Virus record (IMG/VR): IMGVR_UViG_3300042391_000634
Coordinates: 1 to 64,000 of that record
Strand: one strand, 5' to 3'
Length of the DNA: 64,000 nt
Every line of letters begins with the position of its first letter. The stretch's first letter is position 1. This document shows positions 2,353 to 48,152 of this stretch, piece after piece. The notes below the pieces were generated by a model that had not been told where the DNA came from, ran no database searches, and saw nothing but the letters and a program-made list of their open reading frames with translations. Both the position numbers and the translations under genes were made by a program.

Positions 2353-3311
2353 TGAACGATTTAATTTTTATTACAGCATATTGTGAAACTCAAAAACAAG
2401 AAGAGGTTTTAGAACGTTGTGTTAATTCTGTCATAAAATGTGGATACCACATTGCTTTATTATCACATTCACACATATCATTACACATTCAAAAAAAATG
2501 TCAATATTATATGTATGATTATAATAATGACATTTCTAAAGATTATAATTTATTTGGATACACGACATTTCAAATTAATAATAAACAAATACAATCCAGA
2601 TTTTTTAACAAAACATTTTATGGTTTTGCAATATATAGAATGGTCACAATGGCTTGTCAAATTGCAATAAACTTTGGTTACAAAAACATCCATCATATTG
2701 AGTACGATTGTGAATTATTAAACTCAAATTTAATAATTGAAAATAGTAAATTATTAGAAGAATACGATTCGGTGATTTATACCGATAATGGAGATGAAAA
2801 TGGATTTTTATTTGGATCGTTTAAATCTTTTAAAGTTAGTTCATTACCTGAAAAATATAAAAATTACGATAGAGATTTTATCGATAGTGAGATGAGAAAA
2901 CTAAATAAAACGTATTTGGAATATCTAACTAAAAAATTATTTATTGAATCAGGTAATGTGTTATTTAAGAAAGAACCAACAAACGAGGAGTTTAAAAGAG
3001 GTGATTATTTTAATCATAGAAATTTACATTTTACATTATATTATAATCCAGAAGATAAAACTTTAAATATTTTTTACAATGCTTTAGATTTAGGAAAGTC
3101 GGAGGAAATTACCGTAATAATAAATAAAGAAAAAATAGTTAAAATAATAACAAAACCTGCATTTTGGACCACAAGAATTTTAGGTTTATTTAATGAAATA
3201 ATACACGTTAGGGTGGACAATAATAGTAAAATTATTTACGAAATATCTTTTGATAATAAGTTCAGAGAAATTTTTAAAAACAAATCTTATATTTTAAATA
3301 ATGAAAAGTAA
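2352..3311 (+). CDS. Hypothetical protein, possibly glycosyltransferase-like
   Basis: 319 aa, coupled to the sugar genes; contains the acidic motif HHIEYDCEL. Confidence 0.45.
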   Translation: MNDLIFITAYCETQKQEEVLERCVNSVIKCGYHIALLSHSHISLHIQKKCQYYMYDYNNDISKDYNLFGYTTFQINNKQIQSRFFNKTFYGFAIYRMVTMACQIAINFGYKNIHHIEYDCELLNSNLIIENSKLLEEYDSVIYTDNGDENGFLFGSFKSFKVSSLPEKYKNYDRDFIDSEMRKLNKTYLEYLTKKLFIESGNVLFKKEPTNEEFKRGDYFNHRNLHFTLYYNPEDKTLNIFYNALDLGKSEEITVIINKEKIVKIITKPAFWTTRILGLFNEIIHVRVDNNSKIIYEISFDNKFREIFKNKSYILNNEK

Positions 3312-3768
3312 ATTTAACTTTTTCAGGGGGTATGTTGGAACATTAGATATAATGGATGGACAAACATATGCAACAGCATCGTTATATAACCCACATACAC
3401 TTACAAATGACGAAAGAATAGCACAAATCAATAGACGTCTTCAAATAGACGAAGAAATGTGTAATCAAGAAATCATAACTCATGAACAATATATGAGAAA
3501 TAGAGACATGTTAATTGAACAAGAAAGAATAAGAAGATTAGGAATGATAAATCATTCAAGGGAAACCGATAACCAAATTAGATTGTTTCAAGCAACAACA
3601 ACTGTAACCGTAAATCCAACACTATGGACTAAGGTTAAGATATTTGGAACAAGAGTTAAATTGGTTTTAATTGAAACTTGGAAGTTGGAACCTATCGGTG
3701 TTGTGGTGATGACACTGTTAGTGTCAGTTGTTACATTCATAGGTGTAATGAAATTATTCGGAGCATGA
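3301..3768 (+). CDS. FKF-leader protein (MKSKFNFFRG) with C-terminal TM helix
   Basis: ORF track; shared leader; hydrophobic IGVVVMTLLVSVVTFIGVM. Confidence 0.7.
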   Translation: MKSKFNFFRGYVGTLDIMDGQTYATASLYNPHTLTNDERIAQINRRLQIDEEMCNQEIITHEQYMRNRDMLIEQERIRRLGMINHSRETDNQIRLFQATTTVTVNPTLWTKVKIFGTRVKLVLIETWKLEPIGVVVMTLLVSVVTFIGVMKLFGA

Positions 3769-4037
3769 TAAAACCATTCAAATTTTTAACAAAATATGAA
3801 CATCATCGTTTTACTCCTTATTGTTGTTATGATAATGCAAAATTTATTATTGAAACTTTAATATCTACAGATGAATGGGAGACAACCATATTCCCAAAAG
3901 AATACCCACACGAAAATGGTGTATGGAGAGTTCTTTACATACAACGTGGAAGGAATAATTATCATTCCGTTGTTTGTCATGAACCAATAAATCCAGGATA
4001 CATAATTGAAAGATTTATAGTTAATATAGATTTATGA
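3765..4037 (+). CDS. FKF-leader small protein (MIKPFKFLTK)
   Basis: Start reassigned to the ATG at 3765 (ATGA overlap with the upstream stop). Confidence 0.7.
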   Translation: MIKPFKFLTKYEHHRFTPYCCYDNAKFIIETLISTDEWETTIFPKEYPHENGVWRVLYIQRGRNNYHSVVCHEPINPGYIIERFIVNIDL

Positions 4038-4357
4038 TTAGTAGATTCAAATTTTTGACGGATAATGATGAGGATGAAATTCCTGAAGGTTATATCAATT
4101 TAGAGAATGAAAACATTGCAACTTGGATTTGGGAAAGTTTAACACCACCATCAGACACATTATATTATATAGTTTCGGCAGATACTAATGGTATTATTGA
4201 ATTTTTAAGAATGTTTCCGTCAGAGATGATAGTCCCTGTGTGTTCCATTGTTGGTCCAAATGGTGTGGTTCATAACGGTGGAAACGAAGGAAATGGATGG
4301 GGATTTAATATTCAAACCGACCCAATTCACATAACATATTTAAGTTATAACCCATAA
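4034..4357 (+). CDS. FKF-leader small protein (MISRFKFLT)
   Basis: ORF track; ATGA overlap. Confidence 0.7.
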   Translation: MISRFKFLTDNDEDEIPEGYINLENENIATWIWESLTPPSDTLYYIVSADTNGIIEFLRMFPSEMIVPVCSIVGPNGVVHNGGNEGNGWGFNIQTDPIHITYLSYNP

Positions 4358-5358: not shown

Positions 5359-5390
5359 TTTGGATATTCCAAATGGGGGTTGTATATTTG
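5359..5390 (+). promoter_or_regulatory. Bacteroidota-type housekeeping promoter (-33 TTTG, -7 TAnnTTTG)
   Basis: TTTG 5359-5362, 20-nt spacer, TATATTTG 5383-5390; the near-palindrome TTTGGATATTCCAAA overlaps the -33 element. Confidence 0.7.
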
Positions 5391-5585: not shown

Positions 5586-5909
5586 ATGAATAGAAAGGAG
5601 TATAGGAGACTATTACAGGACCCCAAATGGAAGATAAAGGCTTCCTTCATAAGAAAGAGAGATAACCACACCTGCGTCAGATGTGGGAAGAAATCAAATA
5701 GATTACAGGTTCACCATACCAAATACGAAGATGGTCTAATGCCTTGGGAGTATGATAATGATACTTTGGAGTCATTATGTTCTGGTTGTCACAAAAAAGA
5801 ACATAATATTAAACCTAAGAGAAAGTTTACACCAAGGAAGAAGAAAGAACCTAAATTACAAACAAGGGTTATTAAGATTAAACCGTTTGTTGATTCTCTT
5901 GTTCCCTAA
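5586..5909 (+). CDS. HNH endonuclease
   Basis: RDNHTCVRCGK...LQVHHTKY...LESLCSGCHKKEH; preceded by TATTTATA at 5574. Confidence 0.85.
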   Translation: MNRKEYRRLLQDPKWKIKASFIRKRDNHTCVRCGKKSNRLQVHHTKYEDGLMPWEYDNDTLESLCSGCHKKEHNIKPKRKFTPRKKKEPKLQTRVIKIKPFVDSLVP

Positions 5910-6138
5910 CCCTCAATTCGGTTTTAAAAATTTCAATCCATTCTTGTTTGGATTTACCTTCATGAATTTCAGGTATTTCTATTAGTCCTATTCCTCTTAA
6001 ACAACCTAATGTGTTGATAATGTGACTAGTGGTCATCCAAAAAATAGGTGTGTGCCTGCCGGTTGCTGTTTTCCATACCGTATTGTGTCTATCGTAATTG
6101 ACATCTATTTCCGTTCCTTTAAAAAATTTAAAATTCAT
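5878..6138 (-). CDS. FKF-leader small protein (MNFKFFKG), paralog of 12089-12301
   Basis: Shared pattern W.T..G...P....T..I.....L...G......G....EW..I...EL..R. Confidence 0.7.
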   Translation of the reverse strand: MNFKFFKGTEIDVNYDRHNTVWKTATGRHTPIFWMTTSHIINTLGCLRGIGLIEIPEIHEGKSKQEWIEIFKTELRVREQENQQTV

Positions 6139-7586: not shown

Positions 7587-7618
7587 TTTGGAATATATTT
7601 AGTTTATACGTATATTTG
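7587..7618 (+). promoter_or_regulatory. Bacteroidota-type promoter driving the small-gene operon
   Basis: TTTG 7587-7590, 20-nt spacer, TATATTTG 7611-7618. Confidence 0.65.
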
Positions 7619-8123: not shown

Positions 8124-9044
8124 ATGAGTTACATTTTAATTTACATAATAGGATTTATCTTAACACTAACATTCTTAAAGTTATATGGTAAGAAAATGGA
8201 GATTGATTATGATCCACCACATGATGAGGATTATGATGACTATAAAAATAATGCTGAGGCCTATCTATTCTTTTCATTGAGTTGGTTTGTAACAGCACCA
8301 ATGTTTATTGTTGTTGCAACAATTCAGTTGTTATATAAATTCACCCAATGGTTTATGAAATACCCAAACGTATAATATGACACTATTTTTAATTTATTGG
8401 ATACTAACAACAATATACGGAGTATATTGGTTGGTTAAACACCCATCATCAAGACATGGAGATGACAATGATGAATTTACATTATTGGAAGTTATTGCTA
8501 AAATTTTTCCAGCTGGTTTAATAGCTTGGGCAATTGTTCCAATGTTATTATTACATCAGGTTAAATTCAAAAGATAATGACCGACGCACAAATAGTAATA
8601 TCAGTAATTTTTGCTGTGATATTTTTCGTAATTCTTATTTTTAATGTGGTATCATACCCAAACGTGGAGTTATATAAAAAGAAATATGATGAATTGAAAC
8701 GTGGAGTGTATAAGTATGAACCAGATTATGGTGAATCACATTATTTTTATCTATACAGTTACGATATTCATACTCTAACATTTACTCGCACAGATGTTGA
8801 TATCATATTCTTTCTTGATGGTGATATAAAACTATCACATAACTTATACATACACAAAAGTCATTTGTTTATGTCATTAGTTAGTTGGTATTATTGGAGA
8901 AAGTTTCAAAAGTTAAAAGATGAATTGATTAACCAACATAATTTTAATGAGGCATATGCAAGATATAGATTAGGTTATTTGGAATCGTTACAAGAACAAC
9001 CTAAGAAACAAAACAAACTTACCTTCAAATTTTTTAGAGGATGA
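8124..9044 (+). CDS. Three small membrane proteins (8124-8375, 8377-8577, 8577-9044); the last ends in LTFKFFRG
   Basis: ORF track; hydrophobic N-terminal helices; tight gene spacing. Confidence 0.65.
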
Positions 9045-10541
9045 TAATACCATTTAAATTTTTTGTGGGGAAGGTTTATACCGATGAATTTGAATTTCCA
9101 AGAGTAAGGAGATCTCCAGAACATATAGGTAGAGGATATATTCAAACAATCTTACCGACCGAACCATATCTTGCAACACTACCAGAACCCAACTACGATG
9201 GATTTGTTATCAGTCGTGTAAGAACTAAAATGAGACGAAATATAAATTGGAGAGGATATGAAACTTCTATACAAGAAAGAAATGGTGAGGTAATAATATT
9301 AAAGATTGTAAGTGGTATAAACATTGGTGGAATGTTTCACATAGTTTATTTAATTACAAGAGACGGGAATACTGAAAATTATAGAGTAAGTGTCCCATTA
9401 GTCAATTTACAAAGAAGAGGATAATATGGCAAAAGCAAGAAAGATTTTATCAAACACTATAAGTGAATTGTTAAAAGAAACATCGTTGGAAACAAGAATT
9501 AAAATGTCATGTTGGTTTATGATTAACAATCTTATTCATGAATCAGGCGCAAGAGAAGAATCTGCGTGGGACGAAACAAATCCAAGAGATATTGAGATGA
9601 TGAAACTATTGGACGATAAAACAAAAGAACTAACGGAAACAATATTAAGAAACATTAAAGAATGGGAAGAAGATGGTAAACCAATTTAAATTTTTTGAGG
9701 GGAGACCAAAAAGATTATATCACTACGACCTATTGGTTGGGGGTATGCCTGTTGAGGTAATAACTTCAAACGAACCACCAACACATTTTTTTTCTGGTCC
9801 CACACAACATCATAGTTTTTATGTGGGAGTTCAAAATACACAATTAGAATTAATTTATGATGGCGATATGGATGAATTATCCGTTAGAGCAATGGTAGAT
9901 GAATTAAAATATAGATATATAAATTATATATCAATTAATGAACAGGTAATTGGATTTATGGAAGATTTTTTAAATGAACATTTAGATGGAACATCAACAA
10001 TAAGATACATATGATAAAACCTTTTAAACTACTTAATGGATACACATATATAAATGAGTTGCATGAACCATATATTCCGTTGCAGATAACACATGCACCA
10101 CCATTTGGTATATCACATCGTCATTGGAATATGTTGCCACGGGATTTGAGAGGTGGAACCCTAATACATATGGAAATATACATTGAGGGGTGGGAAGCTG
10201 GTCGCAATAATATCACCATCAATCCATATGAAGGTATCATCAATGACCCTGTGGTTACTGAATGGATTGAGTTGTGGAATAGAGGACATTTGAGGTGGTC
10301 TGGTAGAACAGGAATGAATTATGTTAATGTAAATCCCGACCCACCAATAGATGAAAGATATCCGGAATTCTATAACACAGATGAATTAATATTCTTTGAT
10401 GTAACGGAAGAAAGATTAGGTATGCTTGACGGTGAACCATATAAAGTTATGTTGTTCAGACATATTGAAGAGGGAAATACAATAGAAGGAGATACAATAT
10501 ATCCCGAACATCCAATGTATAATTTTCCTGATATAATTTAA
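9041..10541 (+). CDS. Small ORFs 9041-9424, 9426-9689, 9673-10014 and 10011-10541; three have FKF leaders and 10011 has an RMF-like motif
   Basis: Leaders MIIPFKFF, MVNQFKFF, MIKPFKLL; YIEGWEAGRNNITINPY...WIELWNRG in 10011. Confidence 0.65.
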
Positions 10542-11467
10542 AAAACAAAATAATATGAGATTAAACGTAGAATTACTTGCAATTGATTTTTACAGAGTAG
10601 GAAGAAGTTGGATTTCTATTTTAGAAATCAATTATGGTCACCCATTATTTTATATAGAATGGGGACAAGGTATGAAAATACAAATCAGTTTTTTATTTGG
10701 ACTAATTAAAAATTATTAATATGAAATTTGAAGAAGCGGAAGAAAAATCATTAACTGTAAAATGGGAAATAAGAACTTGCTCGCAAGGAGAAAAATGTTG
10801 GTGTAGAACAATCAAACCTATTGAACCCATACTTTTTGATGACGGGGGTCAAGATGAATATTGGATAGTTGGGTCTGGTGAGTTACATAAAAATATTGCA
10901 GAGTATTTTGTTGAACTCCATAATAAAAATATTGAAAATAAAATTAAATAATATGAAATTCAGAAAAACACTCACAGATAAACGTCTTGAAGAATTGTCT
11001 GATAAGGTAAGAAGAGGAACCCCAATCTTAATGAGTGAGGCGATTGAGGTAGTGGAATATCAAGAGATGTTAAAGAAGAATAAACTACCTTTCACAGATA
11101 GAATGCTTAATTTCTTTAAAATAAAAAAATAATATGAATATCATTTCAAACCCAAGCGATTTATTAAAACACTTATCCTTCTGGCATAACAAAACAGATG
11201 ACGAGTGTATTGAAATGGCAACAGGTGAATTTGGCGTTGATGCTGAACGAGCATTAATTAATATACTTGAAAGAGATTTCTGCACCAATATTAATAATAA
11301 TGTAATTGAAAAATTAAAAACATTATGACACCAAGAGAAAGAAAATATCACATAAACAAACGTCTTCGTAAATTACTTTGGGAAGAAATAACAAGAGTAA
11401 TTGATGAGGACATTGAAAATCAATTAAATGGTGGCAAACCTAATCTAGACATTCAACCAATGACAAT

Positions 11468-14400
11468 ATGAAAACATTTAAGTTCCTCTCAAAGAAACAA
11501 ATACAAGTTCCTATACCCAATAGATATAGTAGTTTAAGTCCTGAGGATAGAAACATATACACAAAAGGATATTATGATGCATTTGATTGTTATAATCATA
11601 GTCGTTCGTTAGAATCACCATACAATCCACTTGTGGAAGAATATGAGTATGAATTATGGAGAGAGGGAGTTACGATGTATGAACGAAATAATAATGCATA
11701 ATGATTAAGGACTTCAAATTTTTTCAAGGTAAAAAAGAAAGAATAAATTGGCAACTAACCGGTTTATTAGATGATGCAACAAATGTTCCATTATTGATTG
11801 GTGTATTGGACATCACATACAAATATATTCAGGATAATAATTTAATAGATAATAATAGGGTTAATAATATATTGATTATTGTTATGACCAAATTATACAG
11901 AGACAAATATAATTCTTATAGTGATTATGATATTAGACGTAAGATTGATGAGGTTGCGGTTCATACCAATAGTGTAACAATAAGAAGATACATACAAGAA
12001 CTTGAAGAGGGTGCTTGGATGAGTATTGATGTTGAAGCGGAGATTAATCATATTATTTATGAAAAATGTAAATGGGAAGAACATGACTATGGATTTTAAA
12101 TTTTTTAAAGGGACACCTCCACCTAAATGGAGAACATACGGTGGATTGATGCATCCATTGGAAACCATAAGCACAAATTATATCAAACGAATAATGAAAC
12201 TTTTGGTAACTAATGGTACATTGCCTAATCAAAAAGATGGGAGAACGGCAACCGAGTGGTATATTATATTAGATAATGAATTAAAAAGAAGAAATGATTA
12301 AACCATTTAAATTCTTTTCAGGGATAAAAATACAATATATTCTAATAATCACCAAGGATACCGATACAACGTACAGCATCCCATTAGATATGTATGGACA
12401 TATAATGGAAGTTGCGGTGGGTTTACACAGGGAGAATATGATATTATTTTCACCAGTAGAGTATAGAGTAGAAAACGAAATTGGTGAGGGAGTAACTTAT
12501 TTCTATATGATAAATAATATTGTACCATATTTTAATATAACTAATAGAATAATGATAGAATATAGTGTAAAGTTTCCTGATACAGAATATTATTGTGATT
12601 TTACCACTCAAGAAAATATATCCTTATATGAAACCATTTAAGTTCTTCCAAAATAATATAAAAAGAAAATGGTATTTAAGGAGTGACCACCTCGGTCAAA
12701 TACAATGGATGTATAGACCTGTGGGGGTAATATTCTATATGGAAAATAGATGGGATGGAAATTTTTATACAGAGGAGATGAAGACAATGACGGTGACGGC
12801 TACAAGTAGATATATGTACTCATACAATCAGTTTATGGAAATGAATAGGGATAATATTATATTTGCATATGAATTCGTGGACAATGCAGATATAAGTAAT
12901 ATGATACATTATAACGAAGATAATTTTGATGATATGCCAAGGGATAGACGACTAATATTTAGAGGAGTAATAAGAAATAATGAAACCATTTAAGTTCTTC
13001 CAAAAAGAAGATTATTTTCTTTCAATAGCAAGAAGAGGTGCGGGGAGAACCATCGCTCAAGACCTTGTGCCGGTTCAACCATTGGGCTCACCTGATAATG
13101 ACCTTCATATTCTTAGGAATTCACTATACGGTGCACTGCGTACAAGAGAATGTGCGGTAATTGCATCATCCATCCGAAATTTTAATAATTGGAGAAATGA
13201 AACATTTGACAGAAGTAGTGTTTTCATTATAACCAATAGAGATTTCACACATACTAATGGAAATAACAATCAAACCACAAGATACAGGGCAATAACGCGA
13301 ATTGATGATTGTTATGGACTAATGTTCGATGATTATATTTTAACGGATAGAATCCACGATATATTATCAAGCGGATATAATGAAACTATAGACCATATTC
13401 ACCAACTAGTTGATGAGGTTAACCTACACACAAGAAACAATGAAACCATTTAAATTTTTTAGAACCCCTTTTAACCCAAGACAATACGATCTTGATTCAT
13501 TTACATTCATCGGTGTTAGTCCCATTAAAACTCATGAAGATGTTCAAGGAAGGTATAGAACAATGATTTTTATGAATAATGATACACGTCTACCACTCAC
13601 TGGAAATTTAATACACGAACACGAGGAAGCATTCCATATGGCGGACATAATTGAAATAAGGGGAAATCAAATATTCCAATTACCAAGACAAGAGGCGGAA
13701 TATATAAACGTAACATTAACATTCACACCAAATGAAACCATTTAAGTTCCTAACCAAACCAAATACAATCAATTACGAAGGTGAGTGGTCACGACATGTT
13801 ATTGGAATAGTTTATGATTATATTAACAATAGATATAGAGACACATATATATCAGAAACATTTGATGCTAAATATATTATTACCGAAACAACATATGAAC
13901 TCGGACAATTATCACGTGCTGTTGTTAAAGTATATCCTAATAGAGATACTAACATGATAATAACATATTGGGTAACCGTGGTAAACACATTTGCATTCAT
14001 AACACAACATAATGTTGAACACTATGCGACCATTTAAATTCCTAAACGATAATAAGAAAGATGATTTTCTTATCCCAACGATGGATGAAATTGCTAACGC
14101 ATTAATTGTTGGAAGAGAAGCATATCTAAATGGACATCCGGTAGAATATAATCCTTTTTTAAGACAACAAACATTTGACGCATTTGACGAGGGATGGGAA
14201 TTAGAACATTCATATGATATATTAAGAGACGCACAACAAAGAGCAAACAATGGACTTTAAATTCTTTCAAAAACCAAAACCAATACAACCACCAGGTAAT
14301 ATGTATCTGATGTTTAATATGGATGATGCTCTAATCAATGTGATAAGATGGTTACAATATCATAATTGGGAAATATTAAATAGTGAAACATATATGTCTC

Positions 14401-15511
14401 AGGTGAATGTACCAATCAATAATTGTTTTATAAGGATAACGAGTTGGAGAAGACATATTAATCCACCAATAAGAGTTCAAATAAAATATAGTGTGTTTGA
14501 AGCAAACACATTTTCAAGAAATTTCACATTTATTATGAATGAAGAAGAATTTTTAAGAAGAATAGATATAACAGGAATATGATAAAAGAGTTTAAATTTT
14601 TAAGTAATAACAAATCAATAGGAACTAATACTATTCCATATCCTGATGATTTAGTATGTCCTTTAATGAGAGAGGTATATAAGGCTGGTTATTTATGTGC
14701 AATGGTGGGAAATCAGATAAGTGATAATCGTTACGCAAATACACAATATGCTTATATGTGGAATAGAGGTTGGATTGATTACCAAATGCAAACTGTAAAT
14801 GAGAGAGTTTAAGTTCCTAAGAAATCCTTTATTAGTTACCATTGATGGGAAATCAATCTATCCGGGGACATTATTCTATAGTATGAATAAGATATGTATA
14901 ATATTACCAAGGAAGATAACACCCAAATATACAATAGTAACAAGATGTATCCATCCAATTTATAAGGATGTATTCAAACCTGATTACGATACATTAATGT
15001 ATTTCAGCACAAAAGAATCTGCCGAGTTCTATAAGAGTAGATTAATACATTGGGATGAACACGTTATTGGTGGTGAGGTATTCCATAACAACGCTGACAT
15101 AACATTAACATTTAGAAGATGATAAGACAATTTAAATTTTTATCGGGAGTGAAATCCATGTTGGATATGTATGGTAGAGAAATCAACTCAAATAACTATA
15201 GAACCATCAGTATAACCGGCAATATTCGTTTTCTAAAAGAATACCATAGAAGATTGGATTGTATTTATATTTCACATTATAATATGTTTAATGAATATCA
15301 TCCATTATTTAATGAATCGGTAGATTTATATAATAGAACGGTTGGATTTATAGAAGGAGGTCACATAACAACCCACGAAGAGATAAGGAGATTTGTTCAT
15401 AGCGCCTATTCAGATATGGTATATGGGATATTTGACCAGTATGAAATAGGTGGGGCAACAAATCAGGAGATATTAGTTGATACATATAACTTTATAAACC
15501 CAAGACGATGA
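11468..15511 (+). CDS. Tandem operon of 13 FKF-leader ORFs (starts 11468, 11701, 12089, 12294, 12628, 12980, 13440, 13732, 14024, 14250, 14579, 14799, 15119)
   Basis: Each begins M-x(1-3)-FKF(F/L). After the first two genes, each start overlaps the upstream stop by 4-14 nt. Several starts were reassigned from the ORF track. Confidence 0.8.
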
Positions 15512-15549
15512 TAAAGATTTTAAATACCTGAAGATGATATTTATATAGG

Positions 15550-16395
15550 ATGAAATTAATGGATATATTATTAGAGGATTGGGAAGATGATTACCGAAAT
15601 GTATCTCATAAGCTTAAACTTATGTATAAATTACTTAGAGTAGGGTCGGTTAAAATTAGTAAATTAATACCTGATTTTGAGACACCATTTTGGACAGGAT
15701 TTGATTGGATTGAAGATGGTGATGCATTGATAACATATGAACTACCAAGCGAATATCATTTAATACCTGGTAGTATAACTAGCATATATAGAATAGTAAT
15801 AAGAGGTATAACTATTAATTGTGAAAAATATCCAGCGTTAGCTGATGACATAGATATTAGGGAAGATTTATTAAGATATATTTTACGTAGAATTGAAAAT
15901 TATCTAATACCTACACTCCAAGAGGGAGACGAAATTGAGTTTAGTATAAGAAAAAAACATGAAGAGAATATTATGTTTAAGAATGTCGTAAATGAAAGTG
16001 TTGTTGATGATAAAGAAAATGATTATGATACCGTTGTTAAAAAGGCACCAACAATTTTCAAAGCACTCAAGAAAGGTAAGATAACAATGGAGGTTGATGC
16101 AATAAGATTATTTTATCGAGGTGCAACGGACCCACAAAAATACACATTTGATTATGATTTAGGAGATGTATACATTGTTGAAACAGATCCATTTGAAAAT
16201 AACTACAATGTTAAAGTTTTAATACCGGCAATTAAAATTAACTGTGACGAAAACCCAAATTTAAATAATATTCAAACAATTAAAATGGACATTCTTAATA
16301 TTGTTAAGAAAAAATTTAACAACTTTGGATTGAACATTATTCTTAGAGCAACAAAATTTCGTTTAAAACATAATGGAAAGTGGATTATACCTTAA
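15550..16395 (+). CDS. CTS-like leader (MKLMDILLED) plus two KALKKG domains
   Basis: TATTTATA at 15538; KLKLMYKLLRVG and KKAPTIFKALKKG joined by a VVNES linker. Confidence 0.7.
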   Translation: MKLMDILLEDWEDDYRNVSHKLKLMYKLLRVGSVKISKLIPDFETPFWTGFDWIEDGDALITYELPSEYHLIPGSITSIYRIVIRGITINCEKYPALADDIDIREDLLRYILRRIENYLIPTLQEGDEIEFSIRKKHEENIMFKNVVNESVVDDKENDYDTVVKKAPTIFKALKKGKITMEVDAIRLFYRGATDPQKYTFDYDLGDVYIVETDPFENNYNVKVLIPAIKINCDENPNLNNIQTIKMDILNIVKKKFNNFGLNIILRATKFRLKHNGKWIIP

Positions 16396-16639
16396 TATAT
16401 AAATCCTCAGGTTTAGGTGGTTTTATTTCAAACACAACTGGTCTTTTCTTTTCCCATTTCTCTAAAATCTGTTGAGCCAAGGACACCATAGCCCTTTCAT
16501 AGTATTCCTCACCATATATTGGGACGATTATACTTTTATACATGTCTAATGTATCTGAAATGTTGAGACTATCAACTTTCTTTTTAACCGTGATGGTTTC
16601 ACTAAAATACTTATACGATAATGAGATTGGTATATTCAT
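16385..16639 (-). CDS. Hypothetical protein
   Basis: 84-aa ORF; upstream TATATTTG on the minus strand near 16644-16651. Confidence 0.55.
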   Translation of the reverse strand: MNIPISLSYKYFSETITVKKKVDSLNISDTLDMYKSIIVPIYGEEYYERAMVSLAQQILEKWEKKRPVVFEIKPPKPEDLYIKV

Positions 16640-16651
16640 TCCACAAATATA

Positions 16652-16690
16652 CTAGAATATTCTAGAATATCACAAATAAAGTTATCCACA
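16652..16690. promoter_or_regulatory. Palindrome CTAGAATATTCTAG plus perfect DnaA box TTATCCACA in a divergent intergenic region
   Basis: Palindrome at 16652-16665; DnaA box at 16682-16690. Confidence 0.55.
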
Positions 16691-16739
16691 TTTAAAATCG
16701 TGTTTTTAAATCTCGAATATTTTTATTATATTTAATGAT

Positions 16740-17162
16740 ATGTTGTCTAAATTTAGATTTTTCAGGGGTATAGTTAGTGCAAGGATTGTCAGTATTGATG
16801 GTGCTTTAGAAAGACTAACAAGGACACCTGTTAGTCATATTCCAATACCCGATACTCTTACAACCTTAGTAGAGATACAACAATTTAGGGCAGGATGGAG
16901 ATCGTGTGAGTTTGGAAGAAACATATACGATAATCCATATAGTAATAGAGAAGCTCTAATATATTCATTACATAGAGCATGGGAATATGGATTTACTGAA
17001 TGTTTTAATAATAGAAGAGTTAATAGAGATGAAGAGGTTTATTTAGAAGGATGGGCGACAGCTCAATTAGGGTTACCATTAAATGAAAACCCACACACAT
17101 ATGGTTCAAACCAATTTAATATGTGGTATATAGGATGGAATGACTTTGTTGATAATCATTAA
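16740..17162 (+). CDS. FKF-leader protein with two RMF/CrpP-like repeats
   Basis: FRAGWRSCEFGRNIYDNPY...AWEYGF and YLEGWATAQLGLPLNENPH...MWYIGW. Confidence 0.6.
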   Translation: MLSKFRFFRGIVSARIVSIDGALERLTRTPVSHIPIPDTLTTLVEIQQFRAGWRSCEFGRNIYDNPYSNREALIYSLHRAWEYGFTECFNNRRVNRDEEVYLEGWATAQLGLPLNENPHTYGSNQFNMWYIGWNDFVDNH

Positions 17163-17166
17163 AAAT

Positions 17167-17493
17167 ATGCGAGACTTCAAATTTCTTACCAAGAACGATA
17201 CAATAAACTTTCATGGACAAATGTCCATTGAAGCGCTCGGATATTTTGATGATTACGTTAATCGTATAATTAGATATGAAATCACAACAACAACCGCAAC
17301 ATATAAGATAGCAGATTACACTTATGGTGAAGGTAACGTTGTGGCGGGAACCGTCAACGCATATCCATTAGATGCTCCCAATATCATGGTCACCTACACT
17401 ATAAGGGGTGGAGAGATTACATCACATACAATACATATAGATTATTGGAATACGATGGGGCAATTGATAAATACAATAAGACGAGAGGATTAG
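17167..17493 (+). CDS. FKF-leader protein (MRDFKFLT), paralog of 13732-14037
   Basis: Aligns by eye: FKFLTK..TIN..G......G...DY.N... Confidence 0.65.
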   Translation: MRDFKFLTKNDTINFHGQMSIEALGYFDDYVNRIIRYEITTTTATYKIADYTYGEGNVVAGTVNAYPLDAPNIMVTYTIRGGEITSHTIHIDYWNTMGQLINTIRRED

Positions 17494-23672: not shown

Positions 23673-24773
23673 ATGGATAATAAACAATTCAAAGAACTAA
23701 AATCTCAGGGGAAACACAAATGTACACACTGTAAAGAAATAAAACCTATAAGTGAGTATTATGTTAATAAGAATTATAACACAATAAAGGGTCCGTGTAA
23801 GAAGTGTTATGTCTCATATAATAAAAGATTCAAAAAACATAAGGAAAAGGGAACCAAATGGTTATTGTCTTTAAGGGATAATGGAACAAAGAGATGTTAT
23901 AGTTGTATGGAGATATTACCATTTGATAAGTTTGGTAAGAATAAGAAGTCTATTGATGGACATATGCCATCATGTAAAGTATGTAAGAGTAGGATTGATA
24001 AGGAATATAGGGATTGTGATAAGAATAGACAAAAACTATTGGATAAGAAGAAGGAATACTATCAAAAGATTAAAGGTACGGAAATACATCGTATTAATCA
24101 GAAGAAGAGTAATGAAAAGAGAGATTATAAGGACGAATATAAAAAGTTAAGGAGTAACGAATGGAGAAGAGCAAAGGATGATTTGAGAAAATTAATTACT
24201 TCGTCATTTAAGAAAAGGGAATGGGTTCAGAAGGATACAAAGACCGAACAACTATTAGGTGCTGATTACTTCACCGTAAAAGGATATATTGAAAGACAGT
24301 TTCTTAAAGGAATGACTTGGGAGAATCATGGTGAATGGCATTTGGATCACATTATACCTTTGGACTCTGCGGGTAAAGATAAGGATATATTATATAGATT
24401 GTTTTATTATAAGAATTTATGTCCCGTATGGTGGAAAGATAATTTACAAAAGAGTTACAAAATACCTGAAGTGTGTACACTATGGAGTAATCCCATAGTT
24501 CCCTATAAAGAATTTAATCAGATATTTGAACCTACCCATAAGGGTAATGTTGGATCTAAACTATTCATTGAGAATGGAACAAGATTTGGAAGATTAATTA
24601 CATTGGAAGAATCTGAACCCGTTATATTAAACTCAGGTTGGAATAGAAGGATGTTTAAATGTCTATGTGATTGTGGTGTTGAAAAGGTCATTAGTATGCA
24701 GTCTTTAAGGTCTAAAAAAACGGTATCTTGTGGTTGTTACCATAAGGAAGTTATTAAAGGTAAGAGGAAATAA
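23673..24773 (+). CDS. Homing-endonuclease-like protein: Zn-finger repeats, HNH-like core, C-terminal CDCG/SCGC domain
   Basis: KCTHCKEIKP, RCYSCMEILP, CKVCK; WENHGEWHLDHIIPL; GTRFGRLIT...KCLCDCG...TVSCGC. Confidence 0.75.
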   Translation: MDNKQFKELKSQGKHKCTHCKEIKPISEYYVNKNYNTIKGPCKKCYVSYNKRFKKHKEKGTKWLLSLRDNGTKRCYSCMEILPFDKFGKNKKSIDGHMPSCKVCKSRIDKEYRDCDKNRQKLLDKKKEYYQKIKGTEIHRINQKKSNEKRDYKDEYKKLRSNEWRRAKDDLRKLITSSFKKREWVQKDTKTEQLLGADYFTVKGYIERQFLKGMTWENHGEWHLDHIIPLDSAGKDKDILYRLFYYKNLCPVWWKDNLQKSYKIPEVCTLWSNPIVPYKEFNQIFEPTHKGNVGSKLFIENGTRFGRLITLEESEPVILNSGWNRRMFKCLCDCGVEKVISMQSLRSKKTVSCGCYHKEVIKGKRK

Positions 24774-43965: not shown

Positions 43966-44069
43966 CCTCGTATACCCCCGTTCACAAGTTTCCGACGCCG
44001 GAACCCCCATTGAAATTTGTCCCTCTCTTTTTGTGTCCGTTAATAATAGTGGGATATTTATATGTGTAT

Positions 44070-45380
44070 ATGAAATTAATTGATATTATATTTGAGAGTG
44101 TTGTTGATTTATCTGAAGTAGTAACTAAAGATGAGTTTATTAAAAGGGCACAACAAGTTCATAAGGATGAAAACGGTAATCCAAAATATAGATATAACAA
44201 TGTTATTTATAAGAACACTAGAGTTCCTATAACTGTTACATGTCCAAAACATGGAGACTTTACGGTGTCTCCTGATAATCACACAAGAGGTAGAGGTTGT
44301 AAAATGTGTGGATATGAAAGTACATCTAAAAAGAAAAGAATGACAAAAGATGAGTTTGTTAAAAAAGCACAACAAGTTCATAAGGATGAAAACGGAAACC
44401 CTTCATACAATTACGATAAGGTAAATTATACAACAGGTAGAGTAAAAGTTCCTATCACATGCCCAATACACGGAGATTTTCTTATTGCACCTAATAGTCA
44501 TTTAGCCAATCATGGATGTCCAAAATGTGGATGGAAAAGGTTGGCACTAGTTAAATCTGATACTAAAGACAATTTCGTTAAAAAAGCGGAACAAATTCAT
44601 AAAGATGAGAATGGAAACCCCATGTATGTTTATAATGACGTAACTTATAAAAATGCCATGACAAAGGTCGATATTACTTGTCCAATACATGGAAATTTTA
44701 ATATGAGTCCAAATGCACATTTAGTGGGTCAAAAATGTCCAAAGTGTTCATTAATCAATAGGTCTAATTTAAGGAGATTCACAAAAGATGAGTTTATTAA
44801 AAGAGCACAACAATCAAATAAAGACGATAATGGAAATCCACTATACACATATGATAATGTAAATTATCATAATACTACTGAGAAAGTGAATATTACTTGT
44901 CCTATACACGGAGATTTTCTAATGTCACCTCAATCTCACTTAATAGGTTCAGGATGTTCTAAATGTAGTGAATCAAAAGGGGAGAAATCAATTAGAAAAC
45001 ATTTAAAAGAAATGAATATCACATTTAACTCACAAGAGAGATTTGGTAGTTGTTTTTCTGTAGGAGAAAAAAGTAAAAGATGTTATAAACTTCCTTTTGA
45101 CTTTTTCATACCAAACATAAAAACCGCAATTGAGGTCGATGGTACTCCACATTTCCAACCTAAATTCGGAGAGGAACAACTTAACTCAACAATATTCAAC
45201 GATAAAATAAAAAATAAATTTGTTAAATCGTCTAATCAAATTAATAAATTAATTAGGTTATATTATGATGGAAAAAATATGGATGAATTAATTTCAGAAT
45301 TAAATCGTCTTCTCAAAGAAAAAACATCTAACAAAATAGTTTTATCTAAAGGTTACCCTAAAGGGGGTTGGAACAAATAA
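44070..45380 (+). CDS. Leader plus four DUF723-like CPxHG repeats plus PD-(D/E)XK (Vsr/DUF559-like) endonuclease
   Basis: F...AQQ.HKDENGNP.Y.Y..V.Y.....V.ITCP.HG.F...P..H..G.GC.KC x4; SKGEK.I, LPFDFFIP....AIEVDG..HF. Confidence 0.8.
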   Translation: MKLIDIIFESVVDLSEVVTKDEFIKRAQQVHKDENGNPKYRYNNVIYKNTRVPITVTCPKHGDFTVSPDNHTRGRGCKMCGYESTSKKKRMTKDEFVKKAQQVHKDENGNPSYNYDKVNYTTGRVKVPITCPIHGDFLIAPNSHLANHGCPKCGWKRLALVKSDTKDNFVKKAEQIHKDENGNPMYVYNDVTYKNAMTKVDITCPIHGNFNMSPNAHLVGQKCPKCSLINRSNLRRFTKDEFIKRAQQSNKDDNGNPLYTYDNVNYHNTTEKVNITCPIHGDFLMSPQSHLIGSGCSKCSESKGEKSIRKHLKEMNITFNSQERFGSCFSVGEKSKRCYKLPFDFFIPNIKTAIEVDGTPHFQPKFGEEQLNSTIFNDKIKNKFVKSSNQINKLIRLYYDGKNMDELISELNRLLKEKTSNKIVLSKGYPKGGWNK

Positions 45381-45692: not shown

Positions 45693-46784
45693 ATGAAAAT
45701 TATTATAACGGAGGAACAACTTAACAATATAATATCTGAACACGGATATGGTAGTAAACCTTTACCACAAGAAGAGGTGGATAAAAGATTATTGAAAGCA
45801 AAGAAGGTCGCCGTTAAATTTCCAAACCCAAGACAATTCTCATTAAAATACCCCAACTTATGGAATTTTCTTAGAAGTAAAGGATTACTTGATGATGTGT
45901 TCCCTAATAGAAAATTATACAAAAATGATGGTTATTGGACCCCCGAGACGATATCACAAGAAGCAAGTAAGTATAACACTAAAACTGAATTTTTGAGGTC
46001 TAATCAAGTTGCATATAAAAAGGCGGTTGAGTTAGGTATATTAAACGATTTAATACCTATAGATGGTAGATATGGTTCGTCTGGTAATAAAAAGAAATGG
46101 ACATTGGAAAAATCAATTCAGGTTGCAAAAGAATTTGAAGGGACAAAGACAGAATTTTGGAAAAAACATCCAGCAGCAACATTGGAGTTGAGAAGAAACA
46201 ATTTATTGAAATCTATATTTCCTGACGATAAACGAAAAGGTGATGATGATATATTGATAAATCAAGCAAAAGAATATGAAAATAGATCGGTATTAAGACG
46301 TGATAATCCATCTTTATATAGTAAGTTAGTGATTAGAGGGATGTTATATGATGTATTTCCAAAAGTAGAAATGACCGCCGATGAGATTATTACAAAGGCT
46401 AAAGAATATGAAACACCAACTGAATTATCAAAAGGTAATCAAAATTTATATTTAAAATTAAAAAAAATACCGAATGGTTATGAATTGGCGTTCGGTAAAG
46501 AATATAAATACAAAAAATTATTTGACATTGCGAAACAATACCAAAACAAATATGAATTACTTAAGGGTAATGCGTATGTATATAATAATTTGGAAAAATT
46601 GGGATTATTAAATAAAGCATATGGTATTGAACCAATTGAAAAATTATCCTTAACAAACACATTTAATAAAATTAATCCTGAACCAAAACGAAAGGATAAA
46701 ACAAATAGTAAAATAAAATCATATGAGGATAAAACTACAAAAGAAAAAATGGAATTAATAAGACAATTACGTAGTAAAAATTAA
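45693..46784 (+). CDS. Leader plus tandem helical repeats of the type found in 46935-48152; no nuclease motif seen
   Basis: WT.E....A.KY.TK.EF...N..AY..A...G.L repeated about six times. Confidence 0.65.
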   Translation: MKIIITEEQLNNIISEHGYGSKPLPQEEVDKRLLKAKKVAVKFPNPRQFSLKYPNLWNFLRSKGLLDDVFPNRKLYKNDGYWTPETISQEASKYNTKTEFLRSNQVAYKKAVELGILNDLIPIDGRYGSSGNKKKWTLEKSIQVAKEFEGTKTEFWKKHPAATLELRRNNLLKSIFPDDKRKGDDDILINQAKEYENRSVLRRDNPSLYSKLVIRGMLYDVFPKVEMTADEIITKAKEYETPTELSKGNQNLYLKLKKIPNGYELAFGKEYKYKKLFDIAKQYQNKYELLKGNAYVYNNLEKLGLLNKAYGIEPIEKLSLTNTFNKINPEPKRKDKTNSKIKSYEDKTTKEKMELIRQLRSKN

Positions 46785-46879
46785 ATAGTTTTTCTATAAA
46801 AATTAGATATTTATTAATATACTAGTATTAAATAACTAGATATAAAGAATTAGAATACCAGTTTATACTGGGTAAAACC

Positions 46880-46905
46880 AATCCTCTCCGTTGAGAGGTT
46901 TTTTT
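46880..46905 (+). terminator. Intrinsic terminator
   Basis: CCTCTC-CGTT-GAGAGG followed by a T tract. Confidence 0.7.
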
Positions 46906-46934
46906 ATTTATATAATCGATATTTATATGTGTAT

Positions 46935-48152
46935 ATGAAATTATTAGACATTATATTTGAAAATAAACCTCGTAATGAAAAATCAGATGAAGATTTAAAA
47001 AGAGAGTTGATAAGTAGTCCGAATACAACTGGATTAACATTTGATAATGCTAAATTTATATATAACTCACAACAAAAAAGATATCAAATAACAAATTATT
47101 CTTGTAAATCACACCCCACGTGGTTCAAAGATGGATGGTCCAGAGTAAGTCAAGTTATGGATGGTAGAGCCACATGTGCGGAATGTGCGAAATTAAAACA
47201 AAGGAACAGGCTTGATAAAGAAAGATTAGAAAAAAATGAATTAATAAAAAAATTAGCAGAAAAATACGGTGACCAATTTAAAGAAAAAGAACCCTTATTA
47301 TATGCTGACGGTATTGCAAATAAAATTATTGAACCAAAAAGAAAAAGACCAGGTGAATGGACGGCGAAGGAGATTGAGGATATTGCAGATAACTACACAG
47401 ACTTAAACGATTTTTTTAATAAAGAAAATGCGGCGTATCAAATGGCAGTTAAAATGGGAATAAAAGACCATATAGTTGCACATATGAGTCTTAAAAGACG
47501 TAATTTATCATTTGAAGATATACAAAAAATGGCCGAACCTTTTAAACATAAAATTGAATTTTCAAGAAACGATCCTGCGGCCTATAGAACGGCATATGAC
47601 AATGGGTGGATTGATAAAATTAAAGAGTGGATACCATTAGGTAATAAAGAAAAAAGAATGGTTTACGCTTATGAATTTTATGATAAAAAAGGAAATCCAT
47701 TAGCGATATATGTTGGTTTAACATTAAATGAAGATAGAAGAGGTAAAGAACATAGGGGTCAATGGGTTTCCCGTTCTGGAAAAGAATCTCCGGTTTATAG
47801 ATATATTATAGATAATAAGTTAAAACCAATTTATAAAGTATTGTCAAATGGATACATTCCTTACAAAGAAGCCATTGATATGGAATGTTATTATCAAAAT
47901 GATTTTTATAAAAAAGACAAACACGAAGATGGTTCTTTAGTTTGGAAACCTTTACATAGTGTAAAATGTGGTGGTCTCGGAGGATTCATAAAATGGACTG
48001 AAGAAAAATTAAGAAAGGAAGTGTCAAAATATGAAACACTAAAAGATTTTACCAAATATTCTGGTGGAGCCCCAAGTGCAGCAAAACGATTGGGTATATA
48101 TTATGATTTAATAAAAAATTTAAGTAGAAGGGGAAATATTAATATAAAATAA
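46935..48152 (+). CDS. Leader plus GIY-YIG homing-endonuclease-like protein with helical repeats
   Basis: RMVYAYEF......AIYVGLT....RR..EH...E.Y; C-x2-C; AAY..A...G repeats. Confidence 0.75.
   Translation: MKLLDIIFENKPRNEKSDEDLKRELISSPNTTGLTFDNAKFIYNSQQKRYQITNYSCKSHPTWFKDGWSRVSQVMDGRATCAECAKLKQRNRLDKERLEKNELIKKLAEKYGDQFKEKEPLLYADGIANKIIEPKRKRPGEWTAKEIEDIADNYTDLNDFFNKENAAYQMAVKMGIKDHIVAHMSLKRRNLSFEDIQKMAEPFKHKIEFSRNDPAAYRTAYDNGWIDKIKEWIPLGNKEKRMVYAYEFYDKKGNPLAIYVGLTLNEDRRGKEHRGQWVSRSGKESPVYRYIIDNKLKPIYKVLSNGYIPYKEAIDMECYYQNDFYKKDKHEDGSLVWKPLHSVKCGGLGGFIKWTEEKLRKEVSKYETLKDFTKYSGGAPSAAKRLGIYYDLIKNLSRRGNINIK

What the first reader, a model, noticed from the sequence alone, without database searches (positions are those of the whole stretch)
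9673..15531. The FK codons double as the upstream gene's stop codon: a plug-in coupling junction, with orphan copies
Seen: at nine junctions (stops ending 9689, 12099, 12641, 12993, 13453, 13745, 14037, 14260, 14812) the upstream TAA sits inside the downstream TTT-AAR (Phe-Lys) codons. ATGAAACCATTTAA therefore forces four upstream proteins to end in ETI. A frameshifted stub of the leader (ATGATAAAGATTTTAAATACCTGA) sits at 15508 after the last gene. The 8577-9044 protein ends in LTFKFFRG just before the next leader. Inference: the 14-20 bp junction acts as start, stop and crossover point, so genes can be added or lost like cassettes while translational coupling is kept. Programmed readthrough or frameshifting at the TTTAAA(T) runs is a weaker alternative.
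Basis: partly seen in the sequence, partly recalled or inferred. Interest (0 to 1): 0.6.

Follow-up and report, generated by a model that had tools for sequence, protein, structure and literature searches.

The report
Shared peptide tag links phage gene cassettes
An uncultured 335-kb freshwater phage carries about two dozen small, otherwise unrelated genes that all begin with the same Phe-Lys-Phe-Phe/Leu tag, and the DNA coding for that tag is the point where the previous gene stops and where related phages have swapped, gained and lost these genes one at a time.

Summary
All nine junctions, the four forced -ETI ends, the stub at 15508 and the FKFFRG end of 8577-9044 are as described.

What it is: a hyperplastic region of a T4-type jumbo phage from lake metagenomes. 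Between 3.3 and 17.5 kb about 23 small genes, with bodies unrelated to one another, start M-(I)-K/R-x-F-K-F-F/L.

The tag is conserved as protein. In 99 leaders, codon positions 1 and 2 are fixed and third positions vary at the genome's normal codon usage. TTT is used in 80% of leaders against 81% genome-wide. The TAA inside Phe-Lys is therefore an automatic by-product, not a selected device.

Across relatives and four independent lake samples, cassette order differs. Ancestry switches across the six Phe-Lys bases. Contig joints share 6-9 bases inside leaders. One cassette has spread recently on its own. The 15508 stub marks a 1.65-kb insertion with both ends in a leader.

Translational coupling is inferred, not tested. 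Frameshifting is unsupported. The tag's function is unknown; my best guess is a terminal docking or sorting peptide.

The closest precedents are the T4 internal-protein targeting sequence and PeSL linkers. I rate it a new variant of a known kind.

The parts
3301..3768 (+). Small gene with variant leader MKSKFNFFRG (Lys replaced by Asn). Its homologue in L005 starts MINKFKFFRG.
3765..4357 (+). Two tagged genes (3765-4037 MIKPFKFL, 4034-4357 MISRFKFL). Both use TTC for the first Phe, so there is no TAA. Both have ATGA junctions.
5878..6138 (-). Tagged gene on the minus strand (MNFKFFKG). It is a paralogue of 12089-12301.
7588..7618 (+). Bacteroidota-type promoter-like site (TTG-N19-TAtaTTTG) in the divergent intergenic region upstream of the + strand operon that holds the array.
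   Evidence: consensus match only
8577..9044 (+). Untagged protein with a hydrophobic N-terminal stretch (a membrane anchor by my reading; no prediction was run). It ends in a C-terminal copy of the tag (LTFKFFRG) and stops at the ATGA of the next leader. The C-terminal FKF motif is kept in L005 and L013.
9041..9424 (+). Tagged gene MIIPFKFF.
9426..9689 (+). Untagged gene whose TAA lies in the Phe-Lys codons of the next leader.
9673..10541 (+). Tagged genes 9673-10014 (MVNQFKFF) and 10011-10541 (MIKPFKLL).
10555..11471 (+). Five untagged mini-genes, mostly joined by a second conserved junction, TAATATG(A) (11325 joins by ATGA). The relative L018 has four extra ~60-residue genes inserted at gene boundaries in this stretch, three of them showing this junction.
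11468..15511 (+). Unbroken run of 13 tagged cassettes, starting at 11468, 11701, 12089, 12294, 12628, 12980, 13440, 13732, 14024, 14250, 14579, 14799 and 15119. Every junction overlaps.
15508..15531 (+). Orphan leader stub. It equals the L021 leader ATGATGAAAGATTTTAAAT with one base missing, and it supplies the TGA stop of 15119-15511.
15512..17166 (.). Segment absent from L021, where the 15119-type cassette abuts the 17167-type. Both ends lie in a leader. It holds 15550-16395 (+, preceded by TATTTATA), 16385-16639 (-) and the tagged gene 16740-17162 (MLSKFRFF).
17167..17493 (+). Last tagged cassette (MRDFKFL), a paralogue of 13732-14037.

Best explanation
The region is a hyperplastic block of small genes in an uncultured T4-type jumbo phage. 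The genes are probably early, and the host is probably a Bacteroidota bacterium.

1. The tag (shown). Each cassette encodes a small protein of 68-176 residues. Its first 7-9 residues form a flexible terminal tag, M-(I)-K/R-x-F-K-F-F/L, kept by selection on the peptide.

2. The stops (shown). Phe-Lys is normally written TTT-AAR in this AT-rich genome, and codon 2 usually starts with A. Every leader therefore carries a TAA in the +2 frame and a TGA in the +1 frame. An upstream gene in either frame runs into the leader and stops there. This fixes its last residues (-ETI and the like) and makes start and stop overlap.

3. The crossover (shown by comparison; the mechanism is inferred). The leader is the only repeated DNA in the array, with exact runs up to 26 bases. 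The phage's recombination machinery, or micro-homology joining, crosses over within or next to the Phe-Lys-Phe codons. Any such in-frame crossover leaves both neighbours intact. Cassettes can thus be deleted, inserted, reordered and passed between co-infecting relatives.

4. Expression (inferred). The overlaps allow termination-reinitiation coupling along a long mRNA that has no Shine-Dalgarno sites.

5. Tag function (guess). The tag is a terminal docking or sorting peptide that brings many different effectors to one partner.
For: Protein-level tag:
- In 99 leaders, codon positions 1 and 2 are invariant and third positions vary at genome codon usage.
- 36 body clusters share the tag. The bodies are unrelated by BLASTP and hhalign.
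- dN/dS is 0.16-0.47, so these are real genes.
- In the AF2 model of the 12294-type cassette, the body has pLDDT 84-91 and residues 1-10 have pLDDT 40.

Crossover in the leader:
- blastn blocks start at -20..+9 of a leader ATG and end at +14..+38 of the next in most cases (some HSPs of diverged cassettes break inside genes), in nine loci of relatives.
- Pairs with the same upstream but different downstream cassette are 73% identical in the 15 bases before Phe-Lys and 55% after. The reverse case gives 53% and 70%. Background is 50% and 53%.
- The 12294-type cassette ends QENISLYETI in five genomes with four different successors.
- Lake-metagenome contigs from four samples join 12301>12633 (9 shared bases), 12987>15130 (6 shared bases), 11463>15119 (three samples) and 15119>12631.
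- The 12294 cassette is 93% identical at synonymous sites where its neighbours are 58-78%. dS varies 0.03-0.44 between neighbouring cassettes of one genome pair.
- Stubs occur at 15508 and in L014.
- Leader pairs share runs of 12 or more bases in 28 of 190 pairs, against 0 of 190 in body controls. All the larger direct-repeat families, and 8 of the 20 listed, lie at leader junctions.

Expression context:
- Shine-Dalgarno-like motifs are depleted upstream of starts (13/340 against 38/340 inside genes).
- There is no + strand terminator and no promoter excess in the array.
Against: - Selection alone would also leave only recombinants with breakpoints at gene boundaries. Untagged neighbour genes turn over at TAATATG junctions without the tag.
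- Some joints lie outside the leader, for example 12081>15065/15078 (the L005-like C-terminal end of the 11701-type gene) and the body chimera P0049.
- Coupling and early expression rest on motif matches only.
- There are no RNA, proteome or isolate data.
- The partner of the tag is unknown.
- The second structure model was uninformative.
Confidence: 0.75

Rival explanations
1. Selection filter only. Recombination is random, and the leader has no mechanistic role. Breakpoints are seen in the junction only because every other recombinant breaks a gene in this spacer-less array.
For: Untagged mini-genes next door are also gained and lost at gene boundaries. A few joints and one chimera lie outside leaders.
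Against: Joints share 6-9 bases inside leaders. Ancestry switches within about 6 bases. Leaders are the only repeats, with exact runs up to 26 bases. The untagged genes have their own conserved junction, which is again a short shared sequence.
Confidence: 0.15
2. The tag is a capsid-targeting sequence like that of the T4 internal proteins. The cassettes would then be virion-packaged, injected effectors.
For: The phage has the T4 head module: prohead protease, scaffold and gp23-type capsid protein. The T4 sequence MKTYQEFIAE resembles MKTFKFFQKE. Residues 4 and 7 matter for T4 targeting, and those positions are aromatic or Leu here. T4 internal proteins are likewise diverse bodies behind one conserved tag. 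One tagged protein is a capsid-protein fragment.
Against: No conserved Glu or cleavage motif follows the tag, and net charge ranges from -14 to +8. The distance from Met to Phe-Lys-Phe varies. The late-type TATTTATA motif is absent from the array, and a host-type promoter lies upstream. Two proteins with hydrophobic N-terminal segments (membrane-anchored by my reading; no prediction was run) carry the motif at their C-terminus.
Confidence: 0.2
3. The leader acts as RNA. An AU-rich, unstructured start region would allow initiation without a Shine-Dalgarno site, and the peptide would be incidental.
For: The genome lacks Shine-Dalgarno sites and has A-rich start contexts. The leader is very AU-rich.
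Against: Variation is confined to synonymous positions. C-containing codons are freely used: TTC in 37% of cases at the second Phe, and CTC/CTA/CTT at codon 4. The only replacements are Lys to Arg and Phe to Leu. The motif also occurs at C-termini.
Confidence: 0.08
4. Programmed +1 frameshifting or readthrough at ATT-TAA-R fuses neighbouring cassette proteins.
For: The stop lies on a run of T and A, and the downstream frame is +1 from the upstream frame.
Against: The same cassette uses TAA-in-FK, ATGA, TAATG or a gap in different genomes. There is no TTT enrichment. No stimulatory element was sought or seen. Neighbours change freely, so no fusion partner is conserved.
Confidence: 0.03

Closest known systems
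T4 internal proteins with their capsid targeting sequence (IPI, IPII, IPIII and polymorphic IP loci of T-even phages)
   Same: T4-superfamily phage. A short conserved N-terminal tag of about 10 residues sits on small, mutually unrelated, fast-turning-over proteins (PMC3012670, PMC9026906).
   Different: Different sequence, variable spacing from Met, no conserved cleavage Glu, about 25 genes per genome rather than 3-5, probably early expression, and the motif also occurs at C-termini. Packaging is untested. That the T4 targeting sequence serves as a crossover site is my recollection of Repoila et al. 1994 and was not checked here.
PeSL promoter-stem-loop cassettes of T4-type phages (Arbiol et al. 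2010, PMC2839356; Comeau et al. 2014, PMC4122927)
   Same: Short conserved linkers flank ORFan genes in hyperplastic regions. They act as homologous-recombination sites for deletion, insertion and shuffling without a dedicated recombinase.
   Different: PeSLs are intergenic regulatory DNA of about 100 bases carrying a promoter and a terminator. Here the linker is about 20 coding bases inside overlapping genes. It carries no promoter or terminator and is constrained as peptide.
Integron gene cassettes
   Same: An ordered array of promoter-less single-gene cassettes, read from one upstream promoter, that can be reshuffled.
   Different: No tyrosine integrase in the genome. No structured attC site was looked for. 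The linker is coding.
Orphan toxin cassettes of CdiA/Rhs/MafB loci (from my own knowledge)
   Same: A short conserved coding motif marks the point where variable modules are swapped by homologous recombination. Orphan stubs are left behind.
   Different: Those swap C-terminal domains of one large protein. Here whole small genes are swapped, and the motif is their N-terminus.

Membership tests
T4-type capsid targeting sequence / internal proteins | The phage has the T4 prohead module (gp21-type protease, scaffold, gp23-type capsid protein) | tested here: met
   Peptidase_S77 at C1:123018-123485 (E 5e-21). Acidic 420-residue ORF (gp22-like scaffold by my reading of position and composition; not tested) at 123686. 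Gp23 family capsid protein at 124971-126746.
T4-type capsid targeting sequence / internal proteins | A fixed N-terminal propeptide of about 10 residues ending in a protease site (L/I-x-Glu) | tested here: not met
   Only F-K-F-F/L is fixed. Met lies 2-4 residues before it. No position in the 20 residues after it is enriched for Glu.
T4-type capsid targeting sequence / internal proteins | The proteins are present in the virion and injected | not testable with these tools
   No isolate and no proteome. No RNA runs hold the locus.
T4-type capsid targeting sequence / internal proteins | Expressed when proheads assemble (late) | tested here: inconclusive
   The TATTTATA motif seen before the scaffold gene and about 50 other genes is absent upstream of array genes. 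A host-type promoter-like site lies at 7588-7618. These are motif matches only.
PeSL modular-shuffling elements | An intergenic element with an early promoter and a stem-loop terminator | tested here: not met
   The array genes overlap, so there is no spacer. Promoter-like sites are not above shuffles (146 against 137 +/- 10), and there is no + strand terminator between 8 and 15.5 kb.
PeSL modular-shuffling elements | A conserved linker flanks variable ORFans, and indel ends map to it | tested here: met
Integron | Tyrosine-recombinase integrase | tested here: not met
   PF00589 has no match in the 335-kb genome, while the control rings in 14 of 14 genomes.
Integron | Structured attC recombination sites between cassettes | not tested
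   There is no spacer between cassettes. The leader holds only the 6-base palindrome TTTAAA. No fold test was run.

The most novel reading that the evidence does not exclude
A clade of uncultured freshwater jumbo phages runs a recombinase-free, integron-like cassette system. In it, the codons of a four-residue peptide tag (F-K-F-F/L) are the universal in-frame linker. The tag itself would be a new sorting signal, for example for packaging and injection or for delivery to one host machine, shared by dozens of unrelated effector families.
Probability: 0.2. Interest if true: 0.8.

Novelty: new variant of a known kind. Interest (0 to 1): 0.62.

Why it matters
It shows, with natural-population data, how a phage can keep a large and rapidly changing set of small genes expressible. 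One short coding motif supplies the start, the neighbour's stop and a safe in-frame crossover site.

It extends the linker-mediated shuffling idea (PeSL, T4 targeting sequence) to a coding linker in a host group that lacks Shine-Dalgarno initiation.

It also flags a new, abundant peptide tag. There are 54 and 166 protein clusters for just two cassettes in lake metagenomes, and none has any annotation. If the tag is a sorting or docking signal, it is a handle for finding the partner and for cataloguing the accessory proteins, whose functions are unknown, of a whole uncultured phage clade.

Tried and rejected
Searches that found nothing:
- GenBank phages: no DNA match to 9000-16000 and no tblastn match to three cassette proteins.
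- Pfam and PHROGs on nearly all cassette proteins gave nothing above cut-off. The exception is Gp23 on the 303-kb fragment. There was a weak RMF hit (E 0.02) for 14579 and a weak Gp23 hit for 12980. BLASTP of 12980 against the phage's own capsid protein is not significant.
- Foldseek of the 12294-type model against the PDB gave no match.
- The literature search for the motif found only the unrelated (KFF)3K delivery peptide.
- No tRNA in the window.
- No RNA run holds the locus.

Attempts that failed or were uninformative:
- AF2 of the 12628-type cassette had pLDDT 45.

Ideas rejected or left unresolved:
- TTT is selected to keep the TAA: rejected.
- The bodies are one diverged family: no support from hhalign.
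- The nearest capsid relatives carry the leader: they do not.
- L021 has lost the start of the 14024-type gene: the leader there reads TTGAAAACATTTAAA, so by my reading it uses a TTG start.
- Diversifying selection: dN/dS is below 0.5 throughout.


Full report
**1. The observation**

The window is the first 64 kb of a single 335,630-base virus record. It has 31% G+C and is rated complete by CheckV.

One search shows that at all nine listed stops the TAA sits inside TTT-AAR of the next gene. One search shows the proteins ending at 12641, 12993, 13453 and 13745 end in -ETI. That ending is ATGAAACCATTTAA read in the +2 frame. The stub at 15508 and the LTFKFFRG end of 8577-9044 are also present.

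The leader is far from chance. The pattern ATG-N3-9-TTYAARTTYYT occurs 27 times in the genome, and its reversed control occurs 0 times. Twenty + strand genes between 3765 and 17493 start with it. A variant, MKSKFNFFRG, heads 3301-3768. One copy is on the - strand at 6138, two lie near 303 kb, and a GTG-start copy lies at 323.4 kb.

**2. What the genome is**

It has a T4-type head module: a Peptidase_S77 prohead protease, an acidic scaffold and a 591-residue Gp23-family capsid protein.

The capsid protein's best matches are an uncultured 484-kb phage, Microcystis phage Mel-JY01 and the Flavobacterium 'immuto' phages, at 40-44% identity. None of these carries the leader.

Sequencing runs that hold the array are lake or freshwater metagenomes.

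Shine-Dalgarno-like motifs are depleted before start codons (13 of 340, against 38 of 340 inside genes), and the upstream bases are A-rich. That fits a Bacteroidota host, but this is an inference.

Relatives with the same arrays exist only as IMG/VR and metagenome contigs of 97-636 kb.

**3. The leader is a peptide tag**

- In 99 leaders from 12 sources, the first two positions of the four codons are invariant, apart from Leu CTN. Third positions vary: TTT 79 / TTC 20; AAA 76 / AAG 22; TTT 60 / TTC 37. The fourth codon takes seven spellings of Phe or Leu.
- Genome-wide, Phe is TTT in 81% of cases and Lys is AAA in 80%. Selection is therefore on F-K-F-F/L, and the TAA in the +2 frame is not selected for.
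- Thirty-six body clusters share M-(I)-K/R-P/D/E/Q-F-K-F-F/L. No residue is conserved after it, and net charge runs from -14 to +8.
- The bodies are unrelated by BLASTP and by profile-profile comparison.
- dN/dS is 0.16-0.47, so these are real genes.
- Two cassettes have 54 and 166 homologue clusters in metagenomes, all unnamed.
- In the AF2 model of the 12294-type protein, the body is confident (pLDDT 84-91) and residues 1-10 are not (pLDDT 40). The model has no PDB match.

**4. Why the stops fall in the leader**

Phe-Lys written TTT-AAR holds a TAA in the +2 frame. ATGA, where codon 2 starts with A as it does in about 85% of leaders, holds a TGA in the +1 frame. An upstream gene in either frame is closed inside the leader.

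Window junctions: 9 TAA-in-Phe-Lys, 1 TAA in Ile-Lys, 7 ATGA, 1 TAATG, 1 gap, 1 intergenic.

Over 85 junctions, the TAA frame is used 50 times, the ATGA frame 28 times and the same frame 7 times.

In 120 natural variants of the 12628-type protein, most end in N-E-T/N/S-I. That is simply the next leader read out of frame.

**5. The cassette test**

- (a) blastn blocks between the window and nine loci of relatives start at -20..+9 of a leader ATG and end at +14..+38 of the next leader in most cases; a few HSPs of diverged cassettes break inside genes.
- (b) Cassette order differs between genomes. For example, the 12294, 12628 and 12980 types occur in three different orders.
- (c) The 12294-type protein ends QENISLYETI in five genomes with four different successors. 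The 12980-type ends through TAA-in-FK, ATGA or TAATG according to its neighbour.
- (d) Ancestry switches across the six Phe-Lys bases. With the same upstream but a different downstream cassette, the 15 bases before Phe-Lys are 73% identical and the 15 after are 55%. The reverse case gives 53% and 70%. Background is 50% and 53%.
- (e) Contigs from four independent lake samples show these joints:
  - 12301>12633, with 9 shared bases inside both leaders;
  - 12987>15130, with 6 shared bases;
  - 11463>15119, in three samples;
  - 15119>12631, an order change;
  - 12108>12627.
- (f) The 12294 cassette is 93% identical at synonymous sites between the window and L013, L009 and L020, where neighbouring cassettes are 58-78%. 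dS of adjacent cassettes in one genome pair ranges from 0.03 to 0.44. Single cassettes have therefore moved recently.
- (g) The 15508 stub equals the L021 leader ATGATGAAAGATTTTAAAT minus one base. In L021 the 15119-type cassette abuts the 17167-type. So 15512-17166 is an insertion with both ends in a leader. L014 has a stub that supplies a stop with no gene after it.
- (h) Leaders are the only sizeable repeats in the array. They share exact runs up to 26 bases, with 28 of 190 pairs at 12 or more bases against 0 of 190 in the body controls.

**6. Limits**

- Selection for intact genes would by itself bias surviving breakpoints to the junction.
- The untagged mini-genes at 10555-11471 turn over too. 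L018 has four extra genes there, inserted at gene boundaries, three of them showing a second conserved junction, TAATATG.
- Some joints lie outside leaders. Examples are 12081>15065/15078, which matches the L005-like tail of the 11701-type gene, and a body chimera, P0049.
- Logan contigs and IMG/VR contigs are assemblies. The shared runs are shorter than the 31-base Logan words mentioned in the run-search tool, so by my reasoning from how word-based assemblers work they should not create false joins, but I could not inspect raw reads.

**7. Expression**

There is no + strand terminator, and promoter-like sites are not above shuffles in the array. A TTG-N19-TAtaTTTG site lies at 7588-7618. The TATTTATA motif, found 3-35 bases before about 50 long genes including the scaffold gene, is absent from the array except before 15550.

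I infer one long early transcript with termination-reinitiation coupling. Nothing here tests that.

**8. What the tag does**

This is unknown.

The T4 capsid targeting sequence is the obvious analogue, and the head module is present. Against it: there is no cleavage motif, the spacing varies, expression looks early, and two proteins with hydrophobic N-terminal segments, which I read as membrane anchors, end in the motif. Those two are 8577-9044, which ends in ...NKLTFKFFRG and keeps the motif in L005 and L013, and a protein near 323.4 kb, which ends in ...NKLKDFKFLSGGK. Each is followed at once by a tagged gene.

A motif that works at either end of a disordered tail fits a docking peptide, a degron or a membrane-proximal anchor better. 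From memory only, phi-basic-phi resembles the ClpX N-motif 1 of Flynn et al. 2003.

**9. Comparison and verdict**

Linker-mediated shuffling in T4-type hyperplastic regions is known (PeSL). So are diverse proteins behind one conserved N-terminal tag (T4 internal proteins).

What is new here is the combination. The linker is coding and constrained as peptide. It also closes the upstream reading frame in two of the three frames. It occurs in a genome without Shine-Dalgarno sites and without an integrase, in an uncultured clade, and is documented with population-level joints.

I rate it a new variant of a known kind, with interest 0.62.

Noticed in passing
G000:C1:302925-303167 (- strand; L002 1468-1710): An 80-residue tagged protein (MGVRQFRFFHG...) is the leader fused to a fragment of the phage's own major capsid protein. 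It is 51% identical to capsid residues 349-405 (Pfam Gp23, E 1.6e-13). A second tagged gene, MNFKFFKG, lies just upstream of it.
   Followed up: partly
window 12980-13453: Residues 13-98 give a weak match to the N-terminal part of the Gp23 profile (E about 1e-3, below cut-off). BLASTP against the phage's own capsid protein is not significant.
   Followed up: partly
whole genome; in the window before 4515, 5586, 15550, 18951, 41745, 42979, 45693, 48689, 55914 and others: The motif (G)ATATTTATA lies 3-35 bases (mode 4) before the ATG of about 50 of 340 long ORFs, including the scaffold gene. It is possibly the late promoter, with leaderless or near-leaderless mRNAs. It reads TATTTATA, not the T4 TATAAATA.
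   Followed up: partly
window 8577-9044 and G000:C1 about 322.96-323.40 kb: Two different proteins with hydrophobic N-terminal segments (membrane-anchored by my reading; no prediction was run) end in a C-terminal copy of the tag, preceded by NKL. Each is immediately followed by a tagged gene. The one at 323393 starts with GTG.
   Followed up: partly
window 10541-11471 and L018 1195-2905: Untagged mini-genes use a second conserved junction, TAATATG(A). The relative has four extra ~60-residue genes inserted at gene boundaries in this stretch, three of them showing this junction.
   Followed up: partly
whole genome: Shine-Dalgarno-like motifs are depleted upstream of starts, and the context is A-rich at -14..-10, -5 and -3. 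Bacteroidota-type promoter-like sites lie at 5360-5390 and 7588-7618.
   Followed up: partly
protein P0049 (metagenome): A chimera: the N-terminal two thirds of the 12294-type body joined to the C-terminal third of the 12628-type body. The crossover, or an assembly error, lies inside the bodies.
   Followed up: no
window 23673-24773, 44010-45380, 45693-48152: There is an endonuclease VII/HNH-like protein, an HNH homing-endonuclease-like protein, and two adjacent paralogues of phrog_20046. A GIY-YIG gene lies beside the array in the 636-kb relative L026.
   Followed up: no
window 14024-14260, 14579-14812, 16740-17162, 11468-11701: Three cassette bodies are detectably related to one another (14579 with 16740 and with 14024) and, by my reading, these and 11468 share a G-x-x-x-G...NPY...W..GW-like pattern reminiscent of ribosome modulation factor. 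The only Pfam signal is RMF at E 0.02 for 14579.
   Followed up: partly
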